Of a DNA stretch of 64,000 bases, positions 15,365 through 44,376 are shown piece after piece. Each line of letters begins with the position of its first letter. Positions within the stretch are counted from its first letter, which is position 1. Source of the stretch: Botryllus schlosseri. Lineage: Eukaryota. The stretch covers positions 11,656,001 through 11,720,000 of the forward strand of contig CM119380.1 of assembly GCA_051294905.1 (NCBI GenBank). The letters run 5' to 3'. Both the position numbers and the translations under genes were made by a program. A model generated the notes under the pieces. The model had not been told where the DNA came from, did no database searches, and saw nothing but the letters and a program-made list of their open reading frames with translations.

Positions 15365-15633
15365 GATTTCCAAGTAGGGACATCCTGACGAACTCCTGTG
15401 TAGGTGGCATCCAGGCACCACACCATTAAGACATCCTTTGGAATAGTCATTGGTGACTGGCACAGGAGCTTTCTAAAATTCACTTCCTCTGGTAGTCACC
15501 TGGAGTTACATAAATTGACGTCCAATGATGGGCATACTGAGCAAGTCCTCCGTAACTGAGTGTGGGAGGTGGGACGAGTGGGAACAATTGTGGACATACC
15601 AGTAACTCCACGGGATATCGGGTGTTTGCTGGG
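15365..15633. mobile_element. Orphan right end of a CMC/EnSpm element
   Basis: Diverged homolog of 13565-13835, ending cgggtgtttgctggg; no matching left end found between 14577 and 15365. Confidence 0.8.
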
Positions 15634-18567
15634 AACCAACTCTGCGAAATAATGGATAGAAACGACCTTGTCCTGTTGAATTCATCGTCACCCACTGGTA
15701 TGAATATTGCGTGTGATGACGTCCATCGCTGGTCACTTCTTGATCTGTCGATGTCGTCTCGGGACATTGCGGCGAGATGTGCCACAACAGTAACCGACCA
15801 GCTCATCGGTAGTGATCACGTTGTAGTCCAGACCACATACAATAATAGGGCGTCGTGCAATTCATCAAAACGTAGATGGGATTACAGTAAGGCGAACTGG
15901 TCAGCCTTCTCGGCTGCTGCGGATTTCCACCTCCAATCCAACTTCGTTCCTATGGGGGAAACTGAAGACCTTCACCGCCATTTCACAAATAGCCTACTTT
16001 TAGCGGCGGGAGAGTCGATCCCACGACCGAAAATATCAACGAAAATAGCCGTACCTTGGTGGAACGTGGGATGTACCCGTGCTGTGCGCAGGAAAAGGGC
16101 TGCTTACTTGAAAATGAAACGTACGTTTCACATTCGAGACGTGATCGCCTTCAAACGCATGAGAGCCGAATGTCGAAAAACCATCCTTTCTGCTAAACGC
16201 AAATGTTGGGAGGATTTTTGTGGTACATTGGACTCCCGTACGCAGATGGCGAAAGTCTGGCACGTTATGAAATCTATGTCGGGAGTGCATACGTTCAATT
16301 CCATACCAACGCTGAAGTCGAACGGGTCTATTTCTCAAAATAACAGAACCAAAGCTAATACACTGGCTTCACACTTCGCAAAAACGAGCAGCTCCGACAA
16401 CTACCCAGCAGGATTTCGTATAACGAAGGCTAACTTTGAAAACACGGTTCATCTTACCGCTGACAACGAACCAGATCGGCACAGGAATTCGATCATAAAC
16501 ATCGAATTCACTCTTGCCGAACTGAATCAAGCTTTGCGTAGCCGAAAATCAACTTCACCCGGGAAGGACTCCATAGGGTATTCGATGTTAAAAAATCTAT
16601 CATCCTCCGGTCGCACCGATCTTTTGAAACTATACAATGCATCCTGGGAGACGGGGAAATTGCCAGTCTCGTGGAAACATGCCATAGTCTGCCCAATTGC
16701 CAAAAAGGGCAAAGATCCTACCTCTGTGGAATCGTACCGTCCTATATCTCTCACGAGTCACATTTGTAAAGTCATGGAAGTAATGGTCACCAATCGATTA
16801 AGATGGGATTTGGAGTCAAAAAATCTGATACATCCCTCACAGTCCGGCTTCCGGTGTGGTCGAAGCACCCTGGACCACATACTGCGTCTCCACGACACGA
16901 TTTACAAGAATATCCATCACCAGCGATCGGTGGTAGCGGTCTTCTTAGACATAAGTCGAGCCTACGATATGGTGTGGCGCCACGCACTTCTGTACAAACT
17001 ATACCAGCTCGGTATACGCGGACACATGCACCGATGGATTACAAATTTCCTTTCTGACAGAACTTTCCAGGTGACCGTAGGAAACACTCTTTCCGACAGT
17101 TATGTACTGCAGAACGGTATACCACAGGGAAGCGTTCTCAGCCCCTTGCTGTTCGCGGTAATGATCAATGATTTACCGAGCTCGTTAGGTCATCGGTCTG
17201 AACATGCGGTGTTCGCAGATGACTGCGCTGTTTGGGATAGCGGTCTTCTTATCCAGCCCCTCTTGTCTTCCATTCAATCATCACTCGATGTAATAAGCGA
17301 CTGGTGTTCCAGATGGGGGTTTACCATCAGCAAGGCAAAGACCGTAGGCATGCTGTTCACGAAGAAAAGGAAAATTCCTCCACTTATCTTGAAAACTGGT
17401 GACCATGAACTTGAATTTGTCGACACCTACAAATATTTGGGTATCACGTTTGACAAATTGCTTAACTATAAGCAACATATCGATACGATTTCCAAAAAGT
17501 GCTCCAACAGACTGAATCTAATCAGAGTCGTGACTGGTACCACATGGGGAGCGAGTAAAAGACCATTGCTGCAACTTTTCAGGGCGCTGATACGATCACT
17601 GATTGACTATGGGTTACCAGCATATTACTTCGCCCCAAAAAAGTATCTGGACAAGTTACGCACCATACGAAATCAAGCTCTCCGCCTCTGCTGTGGAGCA
17701 ATGCGCAGCACCCCCATTTGTGCACTTGAAGCATCATGTGACGAGCTTCCTCTCCATCTGCGCCACAAACAGCTTAGCCTTAACTATCGCTGTCACCTTA
17801 GAGGTTACCAGGCTCACGAACATCCAACATTAGGAGTGCTTGAAGACTCTTGGCAGGAGATATATAGCCTCATGAACCCAAAATTCATTACCTTCAACAT
17901 CGCCACCAATGTCGAGTCTCTGAATAACCTTGTCTTGGAAAGAAAAAGTCTTCCAAATCTGCCTCCATGGCTGATTCAATCACCTAATATTGATTTAGAC
18001 CTTGCAAAAATCATTAAAAAAGATATCGCACCTCTGTCGCATAAACCCATAGTCCTGGACTTCATATTCGAACGATATAGGGATGCCACTGAAATATACA
18101 CTGACGGCTCCAAATCAGCAGAGGGAGCCGGTTTTGCCTTTACCATCCCGTCGCTGATGATAAACTTTTCCCAGTCGTGTTCCACTCTTAAGTCAATCTT
18201 CTCCATAGAAGCACAAGCCATTCTCCACGCTCTAAAATGGATCTGCCAGAATGGCTCATACCAACAAACATATCTGATTCTATCGGACAGTCTGAGCGTG
18301 CTATCCGCTATGACCAACCTGCAGGCACCGCAAACGCAGAATGTTATATTTGAATGTGGTCGCTTGCTGAATCAAGTGGTTCAGAAAGGCGCCATTGTTG
18401 TCCTGGCCTGGGTACCGGGGCATGCTGATATCGGTGGTAATGAATTAGCTGATAAATTGGCTTGGCAAGCTGCCAGGACCAATATCGAAAATACCCCTTC
18501 TCAGACGCTTCCAGAAAAAATTAGCCACGCTGAGGCGAAAGCCGAAGTACGTCAATACTGTAGAGCG
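15634..18567 (+). CDS. LINE ORF2 part 1: partial APE endonuclease, reverse transcriptase, RNase H
   Basis: 978 open codons; motifs YRPISLTS, QSGFR, FLDISRAYD, GIPQGSVLSP, FADD, YLG; RNase H YTDGS..E..SDS..WVPGH..NELAD. Confidence 0.93.
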
Positions 18568-19868
18568 GGTTGCCAGTGAACTCGGCACCTGGTGAACTCG
18601 GCACCTTGAACTCGGCACTTGGTGAACTCGGCACTTGATGAACTCGGCACTTCGTTTTACCGTAGATGCTGTGCGATCTCTATTGTTTCAAGTTTATGAC
18701 AATACAATGTTCCCCATGACACCAATAAATGTTTCCCATGAACACATCGAAACTTATGAAGGCCAAAATAATCAGTTTTTGCCTTCAAAGAAACGGTTAT
18801 TATAATTTAACTATATTTTGTTAGAAGGATGTTTCCCTAATGTCACCCTTCACCTTGCTCCTTATAAATTAAATATCGTCCTTCAACTATATTTTATTAG
18901 CAGGATGTTTCCCTAATGTCACCCTTCAACCTGCTCCTGACCAGCTACCTGTGACAAAATCACACCTTCCTATAAGTAATCAGCTAATACAAAATCAGTA
19001 TTGTTGTGTTGTCTATTGAACTTATAAAATCTCTAATAAACCTAACAGTTGAACTTATCAATTACTAATCAACTAATAAATAAAATATATATATATTTTG
19101 CACGATTCTTGCATCTCCAAAGAATTGAGGCATGTTTTTTTCATCTTCCTGGTGTAAGAACGATCGACCTTAGTCGTCAAACAGCATAGCTCATCCTCTT
19201 TGCGATACACCCTCCAATATTTTATTAGTTGACTCGTCCGAGCATGACATTTCAGAGTTGACCTGAGCAGCGGACACATCGGATAACGACGACTCAATGA
19301 GATCATCTTCCTGCAAACGAAATTATAAGTTAAAATCTGATCACTCATATCGAATTAATTAGGACTATTTAACTTACCTGGTTGTTAAGATCGGCTACCG
19401 GTAGCGGCCCCACTTCAATCTCAATGGCATCTTCCTGCAAGCAAAATTTAGTTGAAATCTGATCACTCATATCGAATTAATTAGCACTATTCGACTTACC
19501 TGGTTGTTAAGATCGGCTACCGGTAGCCGCCCCACTTCAATCTCAACGGCACCTAGCTTCCTGCAAACAAAATTTAGTTAAAATCTGATAGCTCGCATCG
19601 AATTAATTAGCACTATTCGACTTACCTGGTTGTAAAGATCGACTACCAGTAGCGGCCCCACTTCAATCTCAACGCATACGTCCAATTGTCCATGTCCATC
19701 GCATATATCAATTATTCCCTCTATCCGTCAAATTAGCAATACATGCACCGAGTAGAGTGTAGACCAACACCGACAGACGGCATTGTTGCGTCACAATATA
19801 AGCGCCGATTTCACCAGGTGCCGAGTTAAAGGTGCCAAGTTCACCAGGTGCCGAGTTCACTGGCAACC
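18568..19868. mobile_element. Non-autonomous DNA transposon (1301 bp) inserted in LINE ORF2
   Basis: TIR ggttgccagtgaactcggcacctggtgaact; exact 8-bp TSD gtagagcg (18560-18567, 19869-19876); tandem gaactcggcac subterminal motifs. Confidence 0.92.
19304..19675 (-). repeat. Three ~124-bp tandem units, each resembling an exon plus intron on the minus strand
   Basis: Each unit has cag|GTAAGT donor and tttgCAG acceptor; introns 65-67 bp; exon 19378-19434 is 57 bp and encodes EDAIEIEVGPLPVADLNNQ. Confidence 0.75.
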
Positions 19869-20399: not shown

Positions 20400-20649
20400 T
20401 GAAGCAGGTGCGCGAGAAAGTAGCTTGCTAACCAATTTGTGGTTGCTATGCGACCTAGTCACGTGATCGAAGTCCTGCAAAAGGCCTATTCTCTCCGTCA
20501 TAGTACTGTTCAGCCACTGTTAGCAGCTGGGCATGCGAGGTTTGTTTGATGTCTTTTACGGAAGCCGAATTGTTGTGGAGAAATGATCGACATCTTGGCG
20601 AGGAAAGAAGGTAGGCGGGAGAGGAGCACTTTTTCGAACACAATTCCAA
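20400..20649 (-). pseudogene. CR1/L2-type LINE RT fragment (continuation)
   Basis: Minus strand reads GIVFEKVLLSRLPSFLAKMSIISPQQFGFRKRHQTNLA, continuing the YRPISV motif after the inserts are removed. Confidence 0.8.
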
Positions 20650-21487
20650 TGTAACAGACCTACGTCTGTAGTTGATCACACACAATTCAACAACTGCTGC
20701 AGAGACTTTATTATACGTCTGTCCGCCGAAGCGGTCAGAAGCAAAAGAGGAAGTGAAAGCACGATGCGATAATACTACAACTGACGTAAGGGGCAGTATA
20801 GAGCACGGCTGCGACACTATTCCCCATCAAACTTGAGAAGTGCCTATAAAAGCACTCTCACAAACTACAATAAAAAAAAAGCAACATCAAAACCGACAAG
20901 TTCAAAATCACCAACAAAATCGCAAACATCCGCATGACCGCATCACATTAGCAGAACACTAACCCTAAACTAACATCAGTGAACAATTCCCTAAACTAAA
21001 ACCCTAACAACGCCGCGCCACATCAACGGGAGAGTCACATGCTCCATCCCCTCTTCATGACATCGGACCGGGAGAGTCACAAGCTCCATCCCCTCCACGC
21101 GCGCTTACATCAGTTCCGCCAGTGAAACAGTCATTACGAAGTGAAGCCATCAGTCAAGTCTTCAAACTTCTCATATCGATGCAAAACTGCTTCTTCAATC
21201 GGTTCAAATAGCCAATGCCGAAATTGAATTTCCGCCCCTCTTTCAGCATACCGGTACTGTCCAGGAATCTTCAGAATTGCAGCCAAATTAATGAAGTATC
21301 GTTTTTAGCGTGCTCGCCATTGTAACAGACCTACGTCTGTAGTTGATCACACACAATTCAACAACTGCTGCAGAGACTTTATTATACGTCCGTCCGCCGA
21401 AGCGGTCAGAAGCAAAAGAGGAAGTGAAAGCACGATGCGATAATACTACAACTGACGTAAGGGGCAGTATAGAGCACGGCTGCCACA
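20650..21487 (-). mobile_element. TRIM-like miniature LTR retroelement, copy 1 (838 bp)
   Basis: 167-bp LTRs 20650-20816 and 21321-21487 (TG..CA, 2 mismatches); 4-bp TSD ccaa; PBS-like tggcgagc and PPT ggggaatag on the minus strand. Confidence 0.92.
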
Positions 21488-21503
21488 CCAATACACGGTA
21501 GAC

Positions 21504-40611: not shown

Positions 40612-41200
40612 TAGGGATGGTGTGAACGTGAGGTTCGCGTTCGCGTTCTGTGTGTGAACCTCGGAAATTTGGAGGTTCGCGTTCACAACAGAACCTTGGT
40701 AGGTTCTGCACTGTGAACCTTTTTTCATATATTACAATTTTCACTTCATTATAACATCTTTGGTTCAAATTTATTGCATTTCAACTACGGGCCAATCTAT
40801 GCATGGCGCTGACAGCATAAACCATCAACACTGAACAAGCATGCACGTTGACATTCTGAAAAATTTTACTTGCTTTGTTGCAAAAGTTTGCTCGAAATAT
40901 CCAGCCTTCCGTTTATGAATATTCAGTGACTCTCTGCTGTGAGCTTGACCCGCAATCACACAATATCAAGAGCGAAATACACTACATGTAGTCAGCGAAT
41001 GATGCTTATTCAAGCAATCAATGAGATTGATATCGTTTTCTGATGTAAAAAGCTAGCAAGCGTGCGGGGTCAATCTTGAAATACAGGGTTGAAATTAGCA
41101 ATGTGACGTCATGAGGTTCACGTTCGCGTTCACACAGAACCTTTCAAAAAGGTTCGCGTTCACACGAACCTGAACCTTTCAGAGGTTCACACCATCCCTA
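40612..41200. mobile_element. Same-family MITE nested inside the outer copy
   Basis: Perfect TIR tagggatggtgtgaac; exact TSD ctaggtac. Confidence 0.9.
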
Positions 41201-41487
41201 CTAGGTACTGCAATGTGAACCTTTTTCATGTAATACAATTTTTTCATGCCATTATACCGTCTTTCGTCACAATTCTTTGCATTTAACCTTCGGACCACTC
41301 TCCGCATGGCGCTGTCAGCATGAAAAGAAATTAAGCGCTAAACGAGCATGCACCATGCCGATTTCAAAAATTATTTGCTCGAAAGCTTGCTCGGAATATT
41401 CAGCTTGCCGTTTTTCAATCTTTAGTGACTCTCTGCTGTGAGCTTTGTCCGCAATCACGCAATAGCAAGAACGTAACACACTGCATG

Positions 41488-42327
41488 TGTGGCAGCCGTG
41501 CTCTATACTGCCCCTTACGTCAGTTGTAGTATTATCGCATCGTGCTTTCACTTCCTCTTTTGCCTCTGGCCGCTTCGGCGGACAGACGTATAATAAAAGC
41601 TCTGCAGCAGTTGTTGAATCGTGTGTGATCAACTACAGACGGAGGTCTGCTACAATGGCGAGCACGCTAAAAACGTTACTTCATTAATTTGGCTGCAAGT
41701 CTGAAGATTCCTGGACAGTAACGGTATGCTGAAAGTTGGCGGAAATTCGATTACGGCATTGGCTATTTGAACCGGTTGAAGAAGCAGTTTTGCATCGATA
41801 TGAGAAGTTTGAAGACTTGACTGATGGCTTCACTTCGTAATGACTGTTTCACTGGCGGAACTGATGTGAGCGCGCGTGGAGGGGATGGAGCTTGTGACTC
41901 TCCCGGTCCGATGTCATGAAGAGGGGATGGAGCATGTGACTCTCCCGTTGATGTGGCGCGGCGTTGTTAGGGTTTTAGTTTAGGGAATTGTTCACTGATG
42001 TTAGTTTAGGGTTAGTGTTCTGCTAATGTGATGCGGTCATGCGGATGTTTGCGATTTTGTTGGTGATTTTGAACTTGTCGGTTTTGATGTTGCTGTTTTT
42101 TTTTTATTGTAGTTTGTGAGAATGCTTTTATAGGCACTTCTCAAGTTTGATGGGGAATAGTGTGGCAGCCGTGCTCTATACTGCCCCTTACGTCAGTTGT
42201 AGTATTATCGCATCGTGCTTTCACTTCCTCTTTTGCCTCTGGCCGCTTTGGCGGACAGACGTATAATAAAAGCTCTGCAGCAGTTGTTGAATCGTGTGTG
42301 ATCAACTACAGACGGAGGTCTGCTACA
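41488..42327 (+). mobile_element. TRIM-like miniature LTR retroelement, copy 2 (840 bp)
   Basis: 167-bp LTRs 41488-41654 and 42161-42327 (1 mismatch, AATAAA inside); 4-bp TSD catg; PBS-like tggcgagc at 41656; PPT ggggaatag before the 3' LTR. Confidence 0.93.
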
Positions 42328-44376
42328 CATGTAGGAAGTCCGAGGTCGACTTCAGAGTTCGTATACCTAAGTGTTCGAGGTTAGGCCTAATCTAGGCTCC
42401 TCCTCGACACCTCATCCGCGTATGCGGAGTCGTACAAAAAGCCTGGAAGTGTACCGTACTACAAGTCGGCAGTTGCGGAATAAAAATGAAGAATATCGGC
42501 CTGGTGTAAATGACCATAGTAGTCGCCAAACACCTTGAATATCTCAAAACAAACAAACAAGTCCGTGAATTGTGCTTAGTCAACCAATCAGGTATTTCCA
42601 TCAACGAATTTGATCTAAATAATGCATCGATATCAAATGTAAAGACCTGTATGTTGGCTATACTGTATAACTTGATTTTGAGATAATATCCAGCGCAAGT
42701 ATAGCAACCTGTGACCGGTCTAGCCAAGCCCTCGTCGAGTTTGCGGGCAAATCGATTTTATGGAATTATTATAGCATTTAATTGTTTCAGTTGATACATT
42801 AGGTGACGTTTAAAAAGTCAGCATGTACTTCAGCTTTGTGGTATAATATGGCCTGCGAATCGTCGCTAGGTATCAGGTACATTAATATATTACTTCACGG
42901 AAATGTAGGGTTGGAATTAGCAAGATGATGTCACGTGACGTCATAGGTTCGCGTTCGCGATCACACGAGCCAGAACCTTTCAGGGGTTCACATCATCCCT
43001 AATATTTAGTGCACGCAAGCAGACATGGGGTAACCACGATTTTTAATATAATCGATTACCGCTATCACTGCATTTTGAATAATCGGACTCGAAATGGATT
43101 ACAATTTAAATTATCCAAAGTAATCTTAATAGATTATTCTGCTTGTACATTGTATAATCGATGCCTTTATGCAGCGCTGGTCATAGTCAATGTACTAACT
43201 GTTGGTGCTCAAGTAGAAGAAGAGTCTTATATTTCTACTCAATTACAAGTATGGAAGTAGCGATATCCAAGACATCTCAAAACTGTTGAAAATGATGATT
43301 TTCATATTACTTGAGACACTGTTAAATTGTTGTGTGTGTGTACGACGTGTATTCTTGTCTACTCTACGGTAATGATTCATTTTGAAAGTGTTTTGGTTTC
43401 TCGGGTGCGTTCTAGTTAATGTTATTCATGCTCGGTTATAATTGGTTTTAAACCAACTCCTCAAGTGGTAGTACGATACCTCGCTCGATGTATGCGCAGG
43501 TCTCATGTATTATATTTTGCTATGTGTGTGAATTGAATTGATATTAACAAGCGTAAGAAACGACCTCAAGCCGTAGACAAGACGGTACAGATTCAGAATT
43601 TCGTCAAAACCTACTTCCAGTCATCTTGATTGTGATTTTTGTGAATGAAATTCCTTGGATTTCAACTTCCCATCACTCTCTGAATCACGTCCGTAGAAAG
43701 AACAGAAATTGAACAAAAATATATAAGGTCAGCTTTGTATGGTCATTGGTCATAAATTATACTATATTGGAAACTTCTGCTAAACATATCACGCTGTTCT
43801 GGTTTTGAATAATGATGCCTACATAACTCGTTTCGTTCACCCCCCGTGCTTGGCATAGTAATCTATGTCTGTTGAGACTATTGTGGTCTGTGGCGAGCAC
43901 TGCAAATTATACAAAAATAGTATACATGCATATACATACATAGTAACATATAGTTGTAAAGTGTAGCTTTGACTTCTCATGTTCGCCCTAAAACGAATAG
44001 ACTGACCCCTAAGGTGCCGACGGACCCCAGGTTAATAACCCCTGCAGTAAAGTCTCTTCGTCATCATGAGTGGCATATTAAGATTGGCACCAACCGTAGG
44101 CATATTCTGATTGATTACAATCATTATTGCTCTTTCTTACATATTTTTTACAGAGAGGTTTGTTGACAAAGGGAACTGGAACTGCACTTTCCAATGCTAT
44201 TCCAATCTAACCGAAAGTTCAAGAATTTGTATCTGTATTTCTCTAGTTCCAATATGCTAATCTAATGATGTATTATTTATCTTTCTGTAGATATATGAAT
44301 GCTATATAGATATGCACAATTGCACACGCAGGGATGTAGACAGGAGTATGTGCAGCTCAAGTGCCATCATGTAGAA

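What the first reader, a model, noticed from the sequence alone, without database searches (positions are those of the whole stretch)
41488..42327. Young TRIM-like miniature LTR retroelement family, two independent insertions
Seen: two ~840-bp copies (20650-21487 minus, 41488-42327 plus), each with 167-bp TG..CA LTRs differing at only 1-2 sites, different 4-bp TSDs (ccaa, catg), PBS-like TGGCGAGC, PPT GGGGAATAG and a ~505-bp non-coding interior. Known: this is TRIM architecture, much less often reported in animals than in plants, and 4-bp TSDs are typical of Ty3/Gypsy integrases. Inference: the family was recently active and mobilised in trans; the 8-nt PBS fits a tRNA-Arg-type 3' end (..GCUCGCCA).
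Basis: partly seen in the sequence, partly recalled or inferred. Interest (0 to 1): 0.75.

Follow-up and report, generated by a model that had tools for sequence, protein, structure and literature searches.

The report
Young miniature LTR retrotransposon (TRIM) family
The two 840-bp repeats are real copies of a small, non-coding, recently active and transcribed LTR retrotransposon (a TRIM) in what earlier notes call a sea-squirt genome, and a 5.9-kb Gypsy-type element in the same genome looks like the helper that copies it; this is a new member of a known kind of jumping gene, not a new kind.

Summary
Copy B is 41488-42327 (+) and copy A is 20650-21487 (-). Both have 167-bp TG..CA LTRs that differ at 1 and 2 sites, 4-bp target duplications (CATG and TTGG), a PPT and a non-coding interior.

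- **Family:** the 495-Mb genome holds at least 27 intact dispersed copies with unrelated flanks. Twenty-three have a perfect 4-bp duplication, 3 have 5 bp and 1 has none.
- **Age:** within an element the LTRs differ by 0.6% (median). Between elements they differ by 5.4%.
- **Primer site:** it is 12 nt, not 8, and matches the 3' end of the host's own tRNA-Arg(ACG) exactly.
- **Transcription:** RNA reads cover the element 130-440x while its unique flanks read 0. Template-switch tags put the main RNA 5' end at LTR nt 68, 20 nt past a TATA-like box.
- **Helper:** no coding element carries this LTR. A 5.9-kb Ty3/Gypsy family shares the first 10 LTR bases, an alignable R-U5 part, the LTR end, the 1-nt spacer, the PBS and a 4-bp duplication. 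At least 7 of its copies have an unbroken 1294-1297-aa frame spanning RT and integrase.

TRIMs are already described in ants, tapeworms and bivalves; I found none described in tunicates. The scan's earlier notes did not hold this family. Insertion polymorphism and the solo-LTR count remain untested.

The parts
41484..41487 (+). Copy B target-site duplication, left (CATG)
   Evidence: identical to 42328-42331
41488..41654 (+). Copy B 5' LTR (167 bp, TGTGGC...GCTACA). U3 is about 41488-41554.
   Evidence: 1 difference from the 3' LTR (nt 89, C/T)
41530..41535 (+). TATA-like box TATTAT (LTR nt 43-48), 20-25 nt upstream of the mapped RNA 5' end
   Evidence: Read from the sequence; position relative
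41555..41555 (+). Main RNA 5' end (start of R, LTR nt 68)
   Evidence: table 7: in run X23, 89 RNA reads carry a template-switch-oligo sequence directly before this base. Recognising that oligo rests on my own knowledge. The upstream bases are not GGG, so strand invasion is unlikely.
41592..41597 (+). AATAAA poly(A) signal in the LTR (nt 105-110). The poly(A) site itself was not mapped.
   Evidence: RNA depth in the 3' LTR falls from about 160 to about 16 in the last bin (table 2)
41656..41667 (+). Primer-binding site TGGCGAGCACGC, after a 1-nt spacer (A at 41655)
   Evidence: exact complement of the last 9 nt of the host tRNA-Arg(ACG) genes plus CCA
41655..42160 (+). Non-coding interior (506 bp). 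Includes a 10-codon remnant ORF that starts at the spacer/PBS ATG.
   Evidence: no Rfam match, no ORF of note
41879..41947 (+). Two copies of a 27-nt direct repeat (41879-41905 and 41921-41947) in the interior; role unknown
   Evidence: also kept in the 72%-similar relative L045
42149..42160 (+). Polypurine tract GATGGGGAATAG abutting the 3' LTR
   Evidence: 33 genomic PPT/LTR junctions
42161..42327 (+). Copy B 3' LTR
42328..42331 (+). Copy B target-site duplication, right (CATG)
20646..20649 (-). Copy A target-site duplication on the 3' LTR side (TTGG on the element strand)
20650..20816 (-). Copy A 3' LTR
   Evidence: (L008): 2 differences from the 5' LTR
20817..21320 (-). Copy A interior with PBS (21319-21308) and PPT
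21321..21487 (-). Copy A 5' LTR
21488..21491 (-). Copy A target-site duplication on the 5' LTR side (TTGG on the element strand)

Best explanation
Both repeats are copies of a non-autonomous LTR retrotransposon of the TRIM type. Shown: the family is transcribed in the sense direction from inside its own LTR, with the RNA 5' end at LTR nt 68, downstream of a TATA-like box. It carries a 12-nt site complementary to the host tRNA-Arg(ACG) 3' end and a PPT. It sits at many unrelated sites, with 4-bp (sometimes 5-bp) target duplications and LTR pairs that are regenerated for each insertion. Inferred: because it encodes nothing, its RNA is packaged, reverse-transcribed from the tRNA-Arg primer and integrated by Gag-Pol supplied in trans. 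The most likely supplier is a 5.9-kb Ty3/Gypsy family in the same genome. That family has the same first 10 LTR bases (TGTGACAGCC), a homologous R-U5 segment ending GGAGGTCT..ACA, the same 1-nt spacer and tRNA-Arg PBS, and a 4-bp duplication. The U3 (promoter) part of the TRIM LTR and its interior are its own.
For: - **Structure:**
- **Independent insertions:** 27 intact copies; 23 have perfect 4-bp TSDs, 3 have 5-bp TSDs and 1 has none. Their flanks are unrelated apart from scattered other repeats.
- **LTR regeneration:** in 24 of 27 elements the 5' LTR is closest to its own 3' LTR. Median divergence is 0.6% within elements and 5.4% between them. Eight copies have identical LTRs, and LTR differences fall at different sites in each copy.
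- **Target preference:** the palindromic consensus GTR-NNNN-YAC is typical of integrases.
- **PBS:** 14 genomic sites carry the matching tRNA 3' end. All 10 tRNA genes found in the six loci I scanned are tRNA-Arg: nine with anticodon ACG and one read as GCG.
- **Transcription:** in raw RNA run X23 the element has 130-440x depth per bin while unique flanks have 0. Flanking repeats with about 100 times more DNA depth reach only 10-26x. Template-switch tags on 89 reads mark the 5' end at 41555.
- **No coding element with this LTR:** of 95 LTR-core hits, none are paired 4-12 kb apart.
- **Helper:** about 22 junctions read AGGTCTTCCACA+A+TGGCGAGCACGCC. At least 11 LTR pairs are spaced 5.65-5.93 kb. 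RT and IN lie in one 1294-1297-aa open frame in at least 7 copies, and all 7 have that PBS junction.
- **LTR homology:** TRIM LTR nt 78-167 aligns with the last 88 nt of the helper LTR at z about 6, with 0-1 of 1000 shuffles scoring as well. Another tRNA-Arg Gypsy family (L043) shows no such similarity.
Against: - No transposition event or insertion polymorphism was observed. The contig-based runs showed no empty site, which proves nothing.
The other copies are known only by coordinates and open-frame lengths.
- The helper's U3, its PPT (GGGGGGAGCAG) and the 13th PBS base differ from the TRIM.
- A second Gypsy family (L043 type, also with copies that have open frames of about 1310 aa) shares the PBS, the spacer and GCTACA, so the helper is not uniquely identified.
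- RNA reads cannot be assigned to single copies, and the library is unstranded.
Confidence: 0.85

Rival explanations
1. The TRIM is mobilised by a different Gypsy family, the L043 type, or by several related tRNA-Arg Gypsy families, rather than by the 5.9-kb TGTGACAGCC...CCACA family.
For: L043 has the same A+TGGCGAGCACGC junction, an LTR ending GCTACA like the youngest TRIM copies, a 4-bp TSD, and RT-RNaseH-IN domains. Relatives of L043 have 1312-1314-aa open frames. Integrases of the two families are 61-65% identical.
Against: The L043 LTR starts TGTAGCCGCC, matching 8 of 10 bases against 10 of 10 for the other family. It shows no LTR similarity to the TRIM beyond chance: score 10 against a shuffle mean of 9.3.
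Confidence: 0.2
2. The family is a fossil: transcribed, but no longer transposing, like ta-TRIM in Echinococcus multilocularis.
For: No polymorphic insertion was seen. Most copies differ from each other by about 5%. Transcription alone does not show mobility (PMC4558846).
Against: Eight of 27 copies have identical LTRs and 8 more differ at one site. A group of four copies is 98-100% identical to each other. The candidate helper has several copies with unbroken Pol-length frames.
Confidence: 0.25
3. The copies arose by DNA-level (segmental) duplication rather than retrotransposition.
For: An older 80-86%-similar group (L041, L047, L050) is a 5'-truncated copy embedded in a repeat of at least 1.7 kb with shared flanks.
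Against: In the main family the flanks are unrelated, each copy has its own TSD, and LTR pairs are homogenised per element.
Confidence: 0.02
4. It is another kind of small LTR-bounded element: a retrozyme with hammerhead ribozymes, or a Cassandra/Helenus/Ajax-type element whose LTRs derive from a small RNA gene.
For: Similar size and non-coding interior.
Against: No Rfam family matches at E up to 1 on either strand. A canonical tRNA PBS and PPT are present.
Confidence: 0.02

Closest known systems
ta-TRIM and its candidate helper lennie (taeniid cestodes; PMC4558846)
   Same: A small non-coding LTR element with mostly 4-bp and a few 5-bp TSDs, strong LTR-driven transcription with a mapped start inside the LTR, and a helper proposed from identical first LTR bases, the same tRNA PBS at the same distance, and the same TSD length.
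   Different: The host is a tunicate (per earlier notes) and the primer is tRNA-Arg(ACG), not tRNA-Leu. There is no sequence similarity. Here the candidate helper has several copies with unbroken Pol-length frames, whereas every lennie copy in E. multilocularis was broken. Here R-U5 is also alignable between the TRIM and the helper.
PbTRIM (red harvester ant; PMC3532108)
   Same: 480-781 bp with 152-184-bp LTRs, a 4-bp TSD, a non-coding interior with PBS and PPT, and young copies.
   Different: PbTRIM has a tRNA-Leu PBS and an ATAT target preference, and no helper was found. Here the PBS is tRNA-Arg, the target consensus is GTR-N4-YAC, and a helper candidate exists.
biv-TRIM (bivalves; PMC6934838)
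   Same: An animal TRIM of similar size.
   Different: biv-TRIM has no canonical PBS and no helper candidate. This element has an exact 12-nt tRNA PBS.
Plant TRIMs (as summarised in PMC3532108 and PMC6934838)
   Same: The same architecture and size class.
   Different: Plant TRIMs have a tRNA-Met PBS and 5-bp TSDs. They are unrelated in sequence, so the resemblance is convergent reduction.

Membership tests
TRIM (terminal-repeat retrotransposon in miniature) | Total length under about 1 kb | tested here: met
   832-876 bp in 26 of the 27 intact copies; one copy is 799 bp
TRIM (terminal-repeat retrotransposon in miniature) | Terminal direct repeats of 100-250 bp with TG..CA ends | tested here: met
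   166-174 bp, TGT..ACA
TRIM (terminal-repeat retrotransposon in miniature) | PBS complementary to a tRNA 3' end just after the 5' repeat | tested here: met
   12 nt, 1-nt spacer, host tRNA-Arg(ACG)
TRIM (terminal-repeat retrotransposon in miniature) | PPT just before the 3' repeat | tested here: met
   GGGGAATAG in 33 genomic junctions
TRIM (terminal-repeat retrotransposon in miniature) | No coding capacity | tested here: met
   Longest ATG ORF is 31 aa; no Rfam match
TRIM (terminal-repeat retrotransposon in miniature) | Target-site duplications at independent sites | tested here: met
   26 of 27 copies have 4- or 5-bp TSDs; flanks are unrelated
Ty3/Gypsy-dependent non-autonomous element | Shares LTR tips, PBS and TSD length with a Gypsy family that has RT before IN | tested here: met
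   The helper's TSD was seen in one copy only (TATA, L052).
Ty3/Gypsy-dependent non-autonomous element | Actual mobilisation by that family's proteins | not testable with these tools
   Needs bench or population data
LARD or internal-deletion derivative of an autonomous element with the same LTR | A coding element with the same full LTR exists | tested here: not met
   95 LTR-core hits, none paired 4-12 kb apart
Retrozyme, or small-RNA-derived LTR elements (Cassandra, Helenus, Ajax) | Hammerhead ribozyme or small-RNA gene sequence in the repeats | tested here: not met
   No Rfam match at E up to 1

The most novel reading that the evidence does not exclude
This may be a currently active TRIM-helper pair in a chordate relative. 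The TRIM has kept only the helper's LTR tips, R-U5 and tRNA-Arg PBS, and has acquired its own U3 promoter and interior. That would make it one of the few TRIMs with an identifiable, apparently intact helper, and so a system in which trans-mobilisation and the minimal cis-requirements of a Gypsy element could be studied directly.
Probability: 0.45. Interest if true: 0.5.

Novelty: new member of a known kind. Interest (0 to 1): 0.4.

Why it matters
TRIMs are well known in plants but documented in only a few animal groups, and for most of them no helper is known. Here the element, its primer tRNA, its transcription start and a plausible intact helper can all be named in one genome. That narrows what a Gypsy element needs in cis to LTR tips, R-U5 and the PBS, and it gives genome annotators of this species a defined young family to mask or to use as an insertion marker. 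It does not change the general picture of how LTR elements work.

Tried and rejected
- **Segmental duplication** is rejected for the main family. It is real only for an older, 5'-truncated copy carried inside a larger repeat.
- **Autonomous element with the same LTR:** none found.
- **Ribozyme or small-RNA origin:** none found.
- **Coding interior:** none found.
- **Overall RNA structure of the transcript:** not distinguishable from shuffles, z = -1.2.
- **Similarity of the TRIM interior to Gypsy internal regions:** none beyond the 20-nt LTR-end/PBS stretch.
- **Insertion polymorphism:** the four runs laid showed no joint across 41487/42328, but three of them are contig sets that break at repeats, so this is inconclusive.
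- **Solo-LTR count:** about 26 LTR-core hits have no PBS or PPT junction within 3 mismatches. I did not use pattern searches to read out letters around that cap.
- **Repbase/Dfam:** not available here.
- **Species name:** it is coded in the tools. 'Sea squirt' comes from earlier notes and I did not check it.

Full report
**Observation**

- **Copy B** is 41488-42327 on the + strand. It has 167-bp LTRs (41488-41654 and 42161-42327) with one difference, flanked by CATG on both sides.
- **Copy A** is 20650-21487 on the minus strand. Its LTRs differ at two sites, and TTGG (ccaa on the + strand) flanks both sides.
- Each LTR starts TGT and ends ACA.
- One spacer base (A) follows the 5' LTR, then TGGCGAGCACGC. 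GGGGAATAG abuts the 3' LTR.
- The 506-bp interior has no ATG ORF longer than 31 aa and no Rfam match.

**The family in the genome**

The window lies on contig 10 of a 495-Mb eukaryotic assembly. Earlier notes of this scan call the organism a sea squirt; I did not verify that.
- A whole-genome search gave 30 near-full-length hits among the 40 candidates scored, out of 230 candidates in the first look.
- In the 27 copies with two complete LTRs, length is 799-876 bp. Twenty-three have a perfect 4-bp target duplication, three have a 5-bp one and one has none.
- The 1-kb flanks are unrelated, apart from other interspersed repeats at varying offsets.
- LTR pairs differ at 0 sites (8 copies), 1 (8), 2 (3), 3 (5), 4 (1), 9 (1) and 13 (1), always at different positions.
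- In 24 of 27 elements the nearest relative of the 5' LTR is the element's own 3' LTR. Median divergence is 0.6% within elements and 5.4% between them. This is the signature of LTR regeneration at each retrotransposition from several diverged source copies.
- The reconstructed targets show a palindromic preference, G-T-R, four duplicated bases, then Y-A-C. For example, A is found at +2 in 19 of 23 sites. Such symmetry is typical of integrases.
- Genome-wide pattern counts give 95 LTR cores, 33 PPT/LTR junctions and about 37 LTR/PBS junctions of the TRIM type.

**Primer**

The genome has 14 sites ending ...CCTGGCGTGCTCG behind a T-loop.
- All ten tRNA genes in the six loci I scanned are tRNA-Arg: nine with anticodon ACG and one read as GCG. 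Several sit in a cluster on contig 5.
- With CCA added, their 3' end is the exact complement of the element's 12-nt site.

**Transcription**

I laid one raw bulk RNA run of the same species (X23) and three contig sets on 40688-43127.
- The element is covered 130-440x per bin, while the unique flanks (41262-41425, 42328-42409, 42574-42737) read 0.
- Flanking high-copy repeats have about 100 times more DNA word depth than the TRIM in run X5, yet reach only 10-26x in RNA. DNA contamination therefore cannot explain the signal.
- Eighty-nine reads carry, directly before base 41555, a sequence I recognise (own knowledge) as a SMART template-switch oligo, in the forward direction. That marks a sense RNA 5' end at LTR nt 68, 20 nt downstream of TATTAT (nt 43-48).
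- A minor set of 34 reads starts near 41622.
- AATAAA lies at nt 105-110, and RNA depth collapses in the last 80 nt of the 3' LTR. This fits a U3-R-U5 layout of roughly 67, 60 and 40 nt. The poly(A) site itself was not mapped.
- In the contig set X7, from a different study and only guessed to be RNA, the TRIM is about 30-fold enriched relative to those repeats compared with X5.

**Who moves it**

No coding element carries this LTR: no two LTR cores lie 4-12 kb apart. Searching the LTR-end/PBS junction with mismatches revealed other elements with the same A+tRNA-Arg PBS.

*L043 family.* L043 is a 6-kb Ty3/Gypsy element with zf-CCHC, RVT_1, RT_RNaseH_2, Integrase_H2C2 and rve domains. It has 241-bp LTRs (TGTAGCCGCC...GGCTACA) and a 4-bp TSD.

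*The better candidate.* About 22 junctions read AGGTCTTCCACA+A+TGGCGAGCACGCC.
- The one copy I could fetch (L052) is a degraded 4.6-kb element. It has 244-bp LTRs starting TGTGACAGCC, the same first ten bases as many TRIM copies, and a TATA TSD. Only its integrase is recognisable.
- The family has 116 LTR starts in the genome, and at least 11 pairs spaced 5.65-5.93 kb, which means elements of about 5.9 kb.
- In at least seven of these, RT (68% identical to the L043 RT) and integrase fall in one unbroken frame of 1294-1297 aa, with RT upstream of IN. All seven carry the PBS junction.
- TRIM LTR nt 78-167, that is R-U5 as mapped above, aligns with the last 88 nt of this family's LTR. The alignment includes AATAAAG, TTGTGAATC and GGAGGTCT..ACA. 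It scores z about 6, and 0-1 of 1000 shuffles do as well. The L043 LTR scores at chance.
- In both Gypsy families the gag ORF starts at the ATG formed by the spacer and the PBS. The TRIM keeps that ATG and the first four to five codons (MAST shared with both families, MASTL with L043) before an early stop.

My reading is that the TRIM descends from, or recombined with, this Gypsy lineage. It keeps the cis-parts the helper's proteins must recognise, and has its own U3 and interior.

**Limits**

- Mobility itself is inferred.
- No empty allele was seen, but the contig sets break at repeats, so that says nothing.
- The solo-LTR count is unresolved: about 26 LTR cores have neither junction nearby. 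Many of them carry the sequence variant of an older group (L041, L047, L050), which turned out to be a 5'-truncated TRIM copy riding inside a repeat of at least 1.7 kb with shared flanks.

**Comparison with the literature**

Animal TRIMs are described in an ant (PMC3532108), in taeniid tapeworms with the candidate helper lennie (PMC4558846) and in bivalves (PMC6934838).
- The tapeworm case is the closest parallel. It rests on the same kind of argument (first LTR bases, same PBS at the same distance, 4-bp with some 5-bp TSDs) and shows the same strong LTR-driven transcription.
- The differences here are the host lineage, the tRNA-Arg primer, the extra R-U5 homology and a helper family that still has unbroken Pol-length frames.
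- Three full-text searches found no TRIM described in tunicates. Repbase and Dfam could not be consulted.
- The scan's own earlier notes on this genome do not hold this family.

**Verdict**

This is a new member of a known kind, of moderate interest.

Noticed in passing
L041:1-1706, L047 and L050 (G000 C1:8729500, C6:13465800, C11:5043600): A 5'-truncated, 80-86%-similar TRIM copy lies inside a larger repeat of at least 1.7 kb whose copies share flanks at 90-93% identity. An old TRIM insertion is therefore being multiplied as a passenger of another repeat.
   Followed up: partly
L043:47-6051 (G000 C2:30407746-30413750): A 6-kb Ty3/Gypsy element with a tRNA-Arg PBS whose gag ATG is formed by the spacer plus the first two PBS bases. 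Its pol is split by stops in this copy, while relatives elsewhere have 1312-1314-aa open frames. L044, L049 and L051 are 1.1-1.4-kb short derivatives with the same type of LTR, possibly a second non-autonomous family.
   Followed up: partly
L042 (G000 C1:39198400-39208399, minus strand), oriented positions 300-360: Two LTR ends with their tRNA-Arg PBSs face each other head-to-head, separated by only 8 nt (PBS, ACCCTGAT, inverted PBS), forming a near-perfect palindrome. Origin unexplained.
   Followed up: no
G000 C5:5093600-5103020 (L033-L040): A cluster of at least eight tRNA-Arg(ACG) genes within 10 kb, in both orientations. This is the tRNA that primes the TRIM and several Gypsy families.
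   Followed up: partly
window 15562-18579 (+): A 1005-aa ORF with RVT_1 and RNase_H domains, probably a non-LTR (LINE-type) retrotransposon.
   Followed up: partly
window 40688-41261 and 42410-42573: Very high-copy repeats flank copy B. Their DNA word depth is about 100 times that of the TRIM in run X5, and many contig joints link the two sides, so copy B seems to have landed in or next to an abundant repeat.
   Followed up: no
L045:180-1010 (G000 C5:8043900-): An old relative of the TRIM interior (72-74% identity) with a duplicated LTR-end/PBS segment and no recognisable 3' LTR. The interior's 27-nt repeat region is still recognisable.
   Followed up: partly
L003 and L016: L003 has no matching TSD (TACC vs GATC). 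L016 has 9 LTR differences clustered in nt 74-150. Both look like products of recombination or conversion between family members.
   Followed up: no
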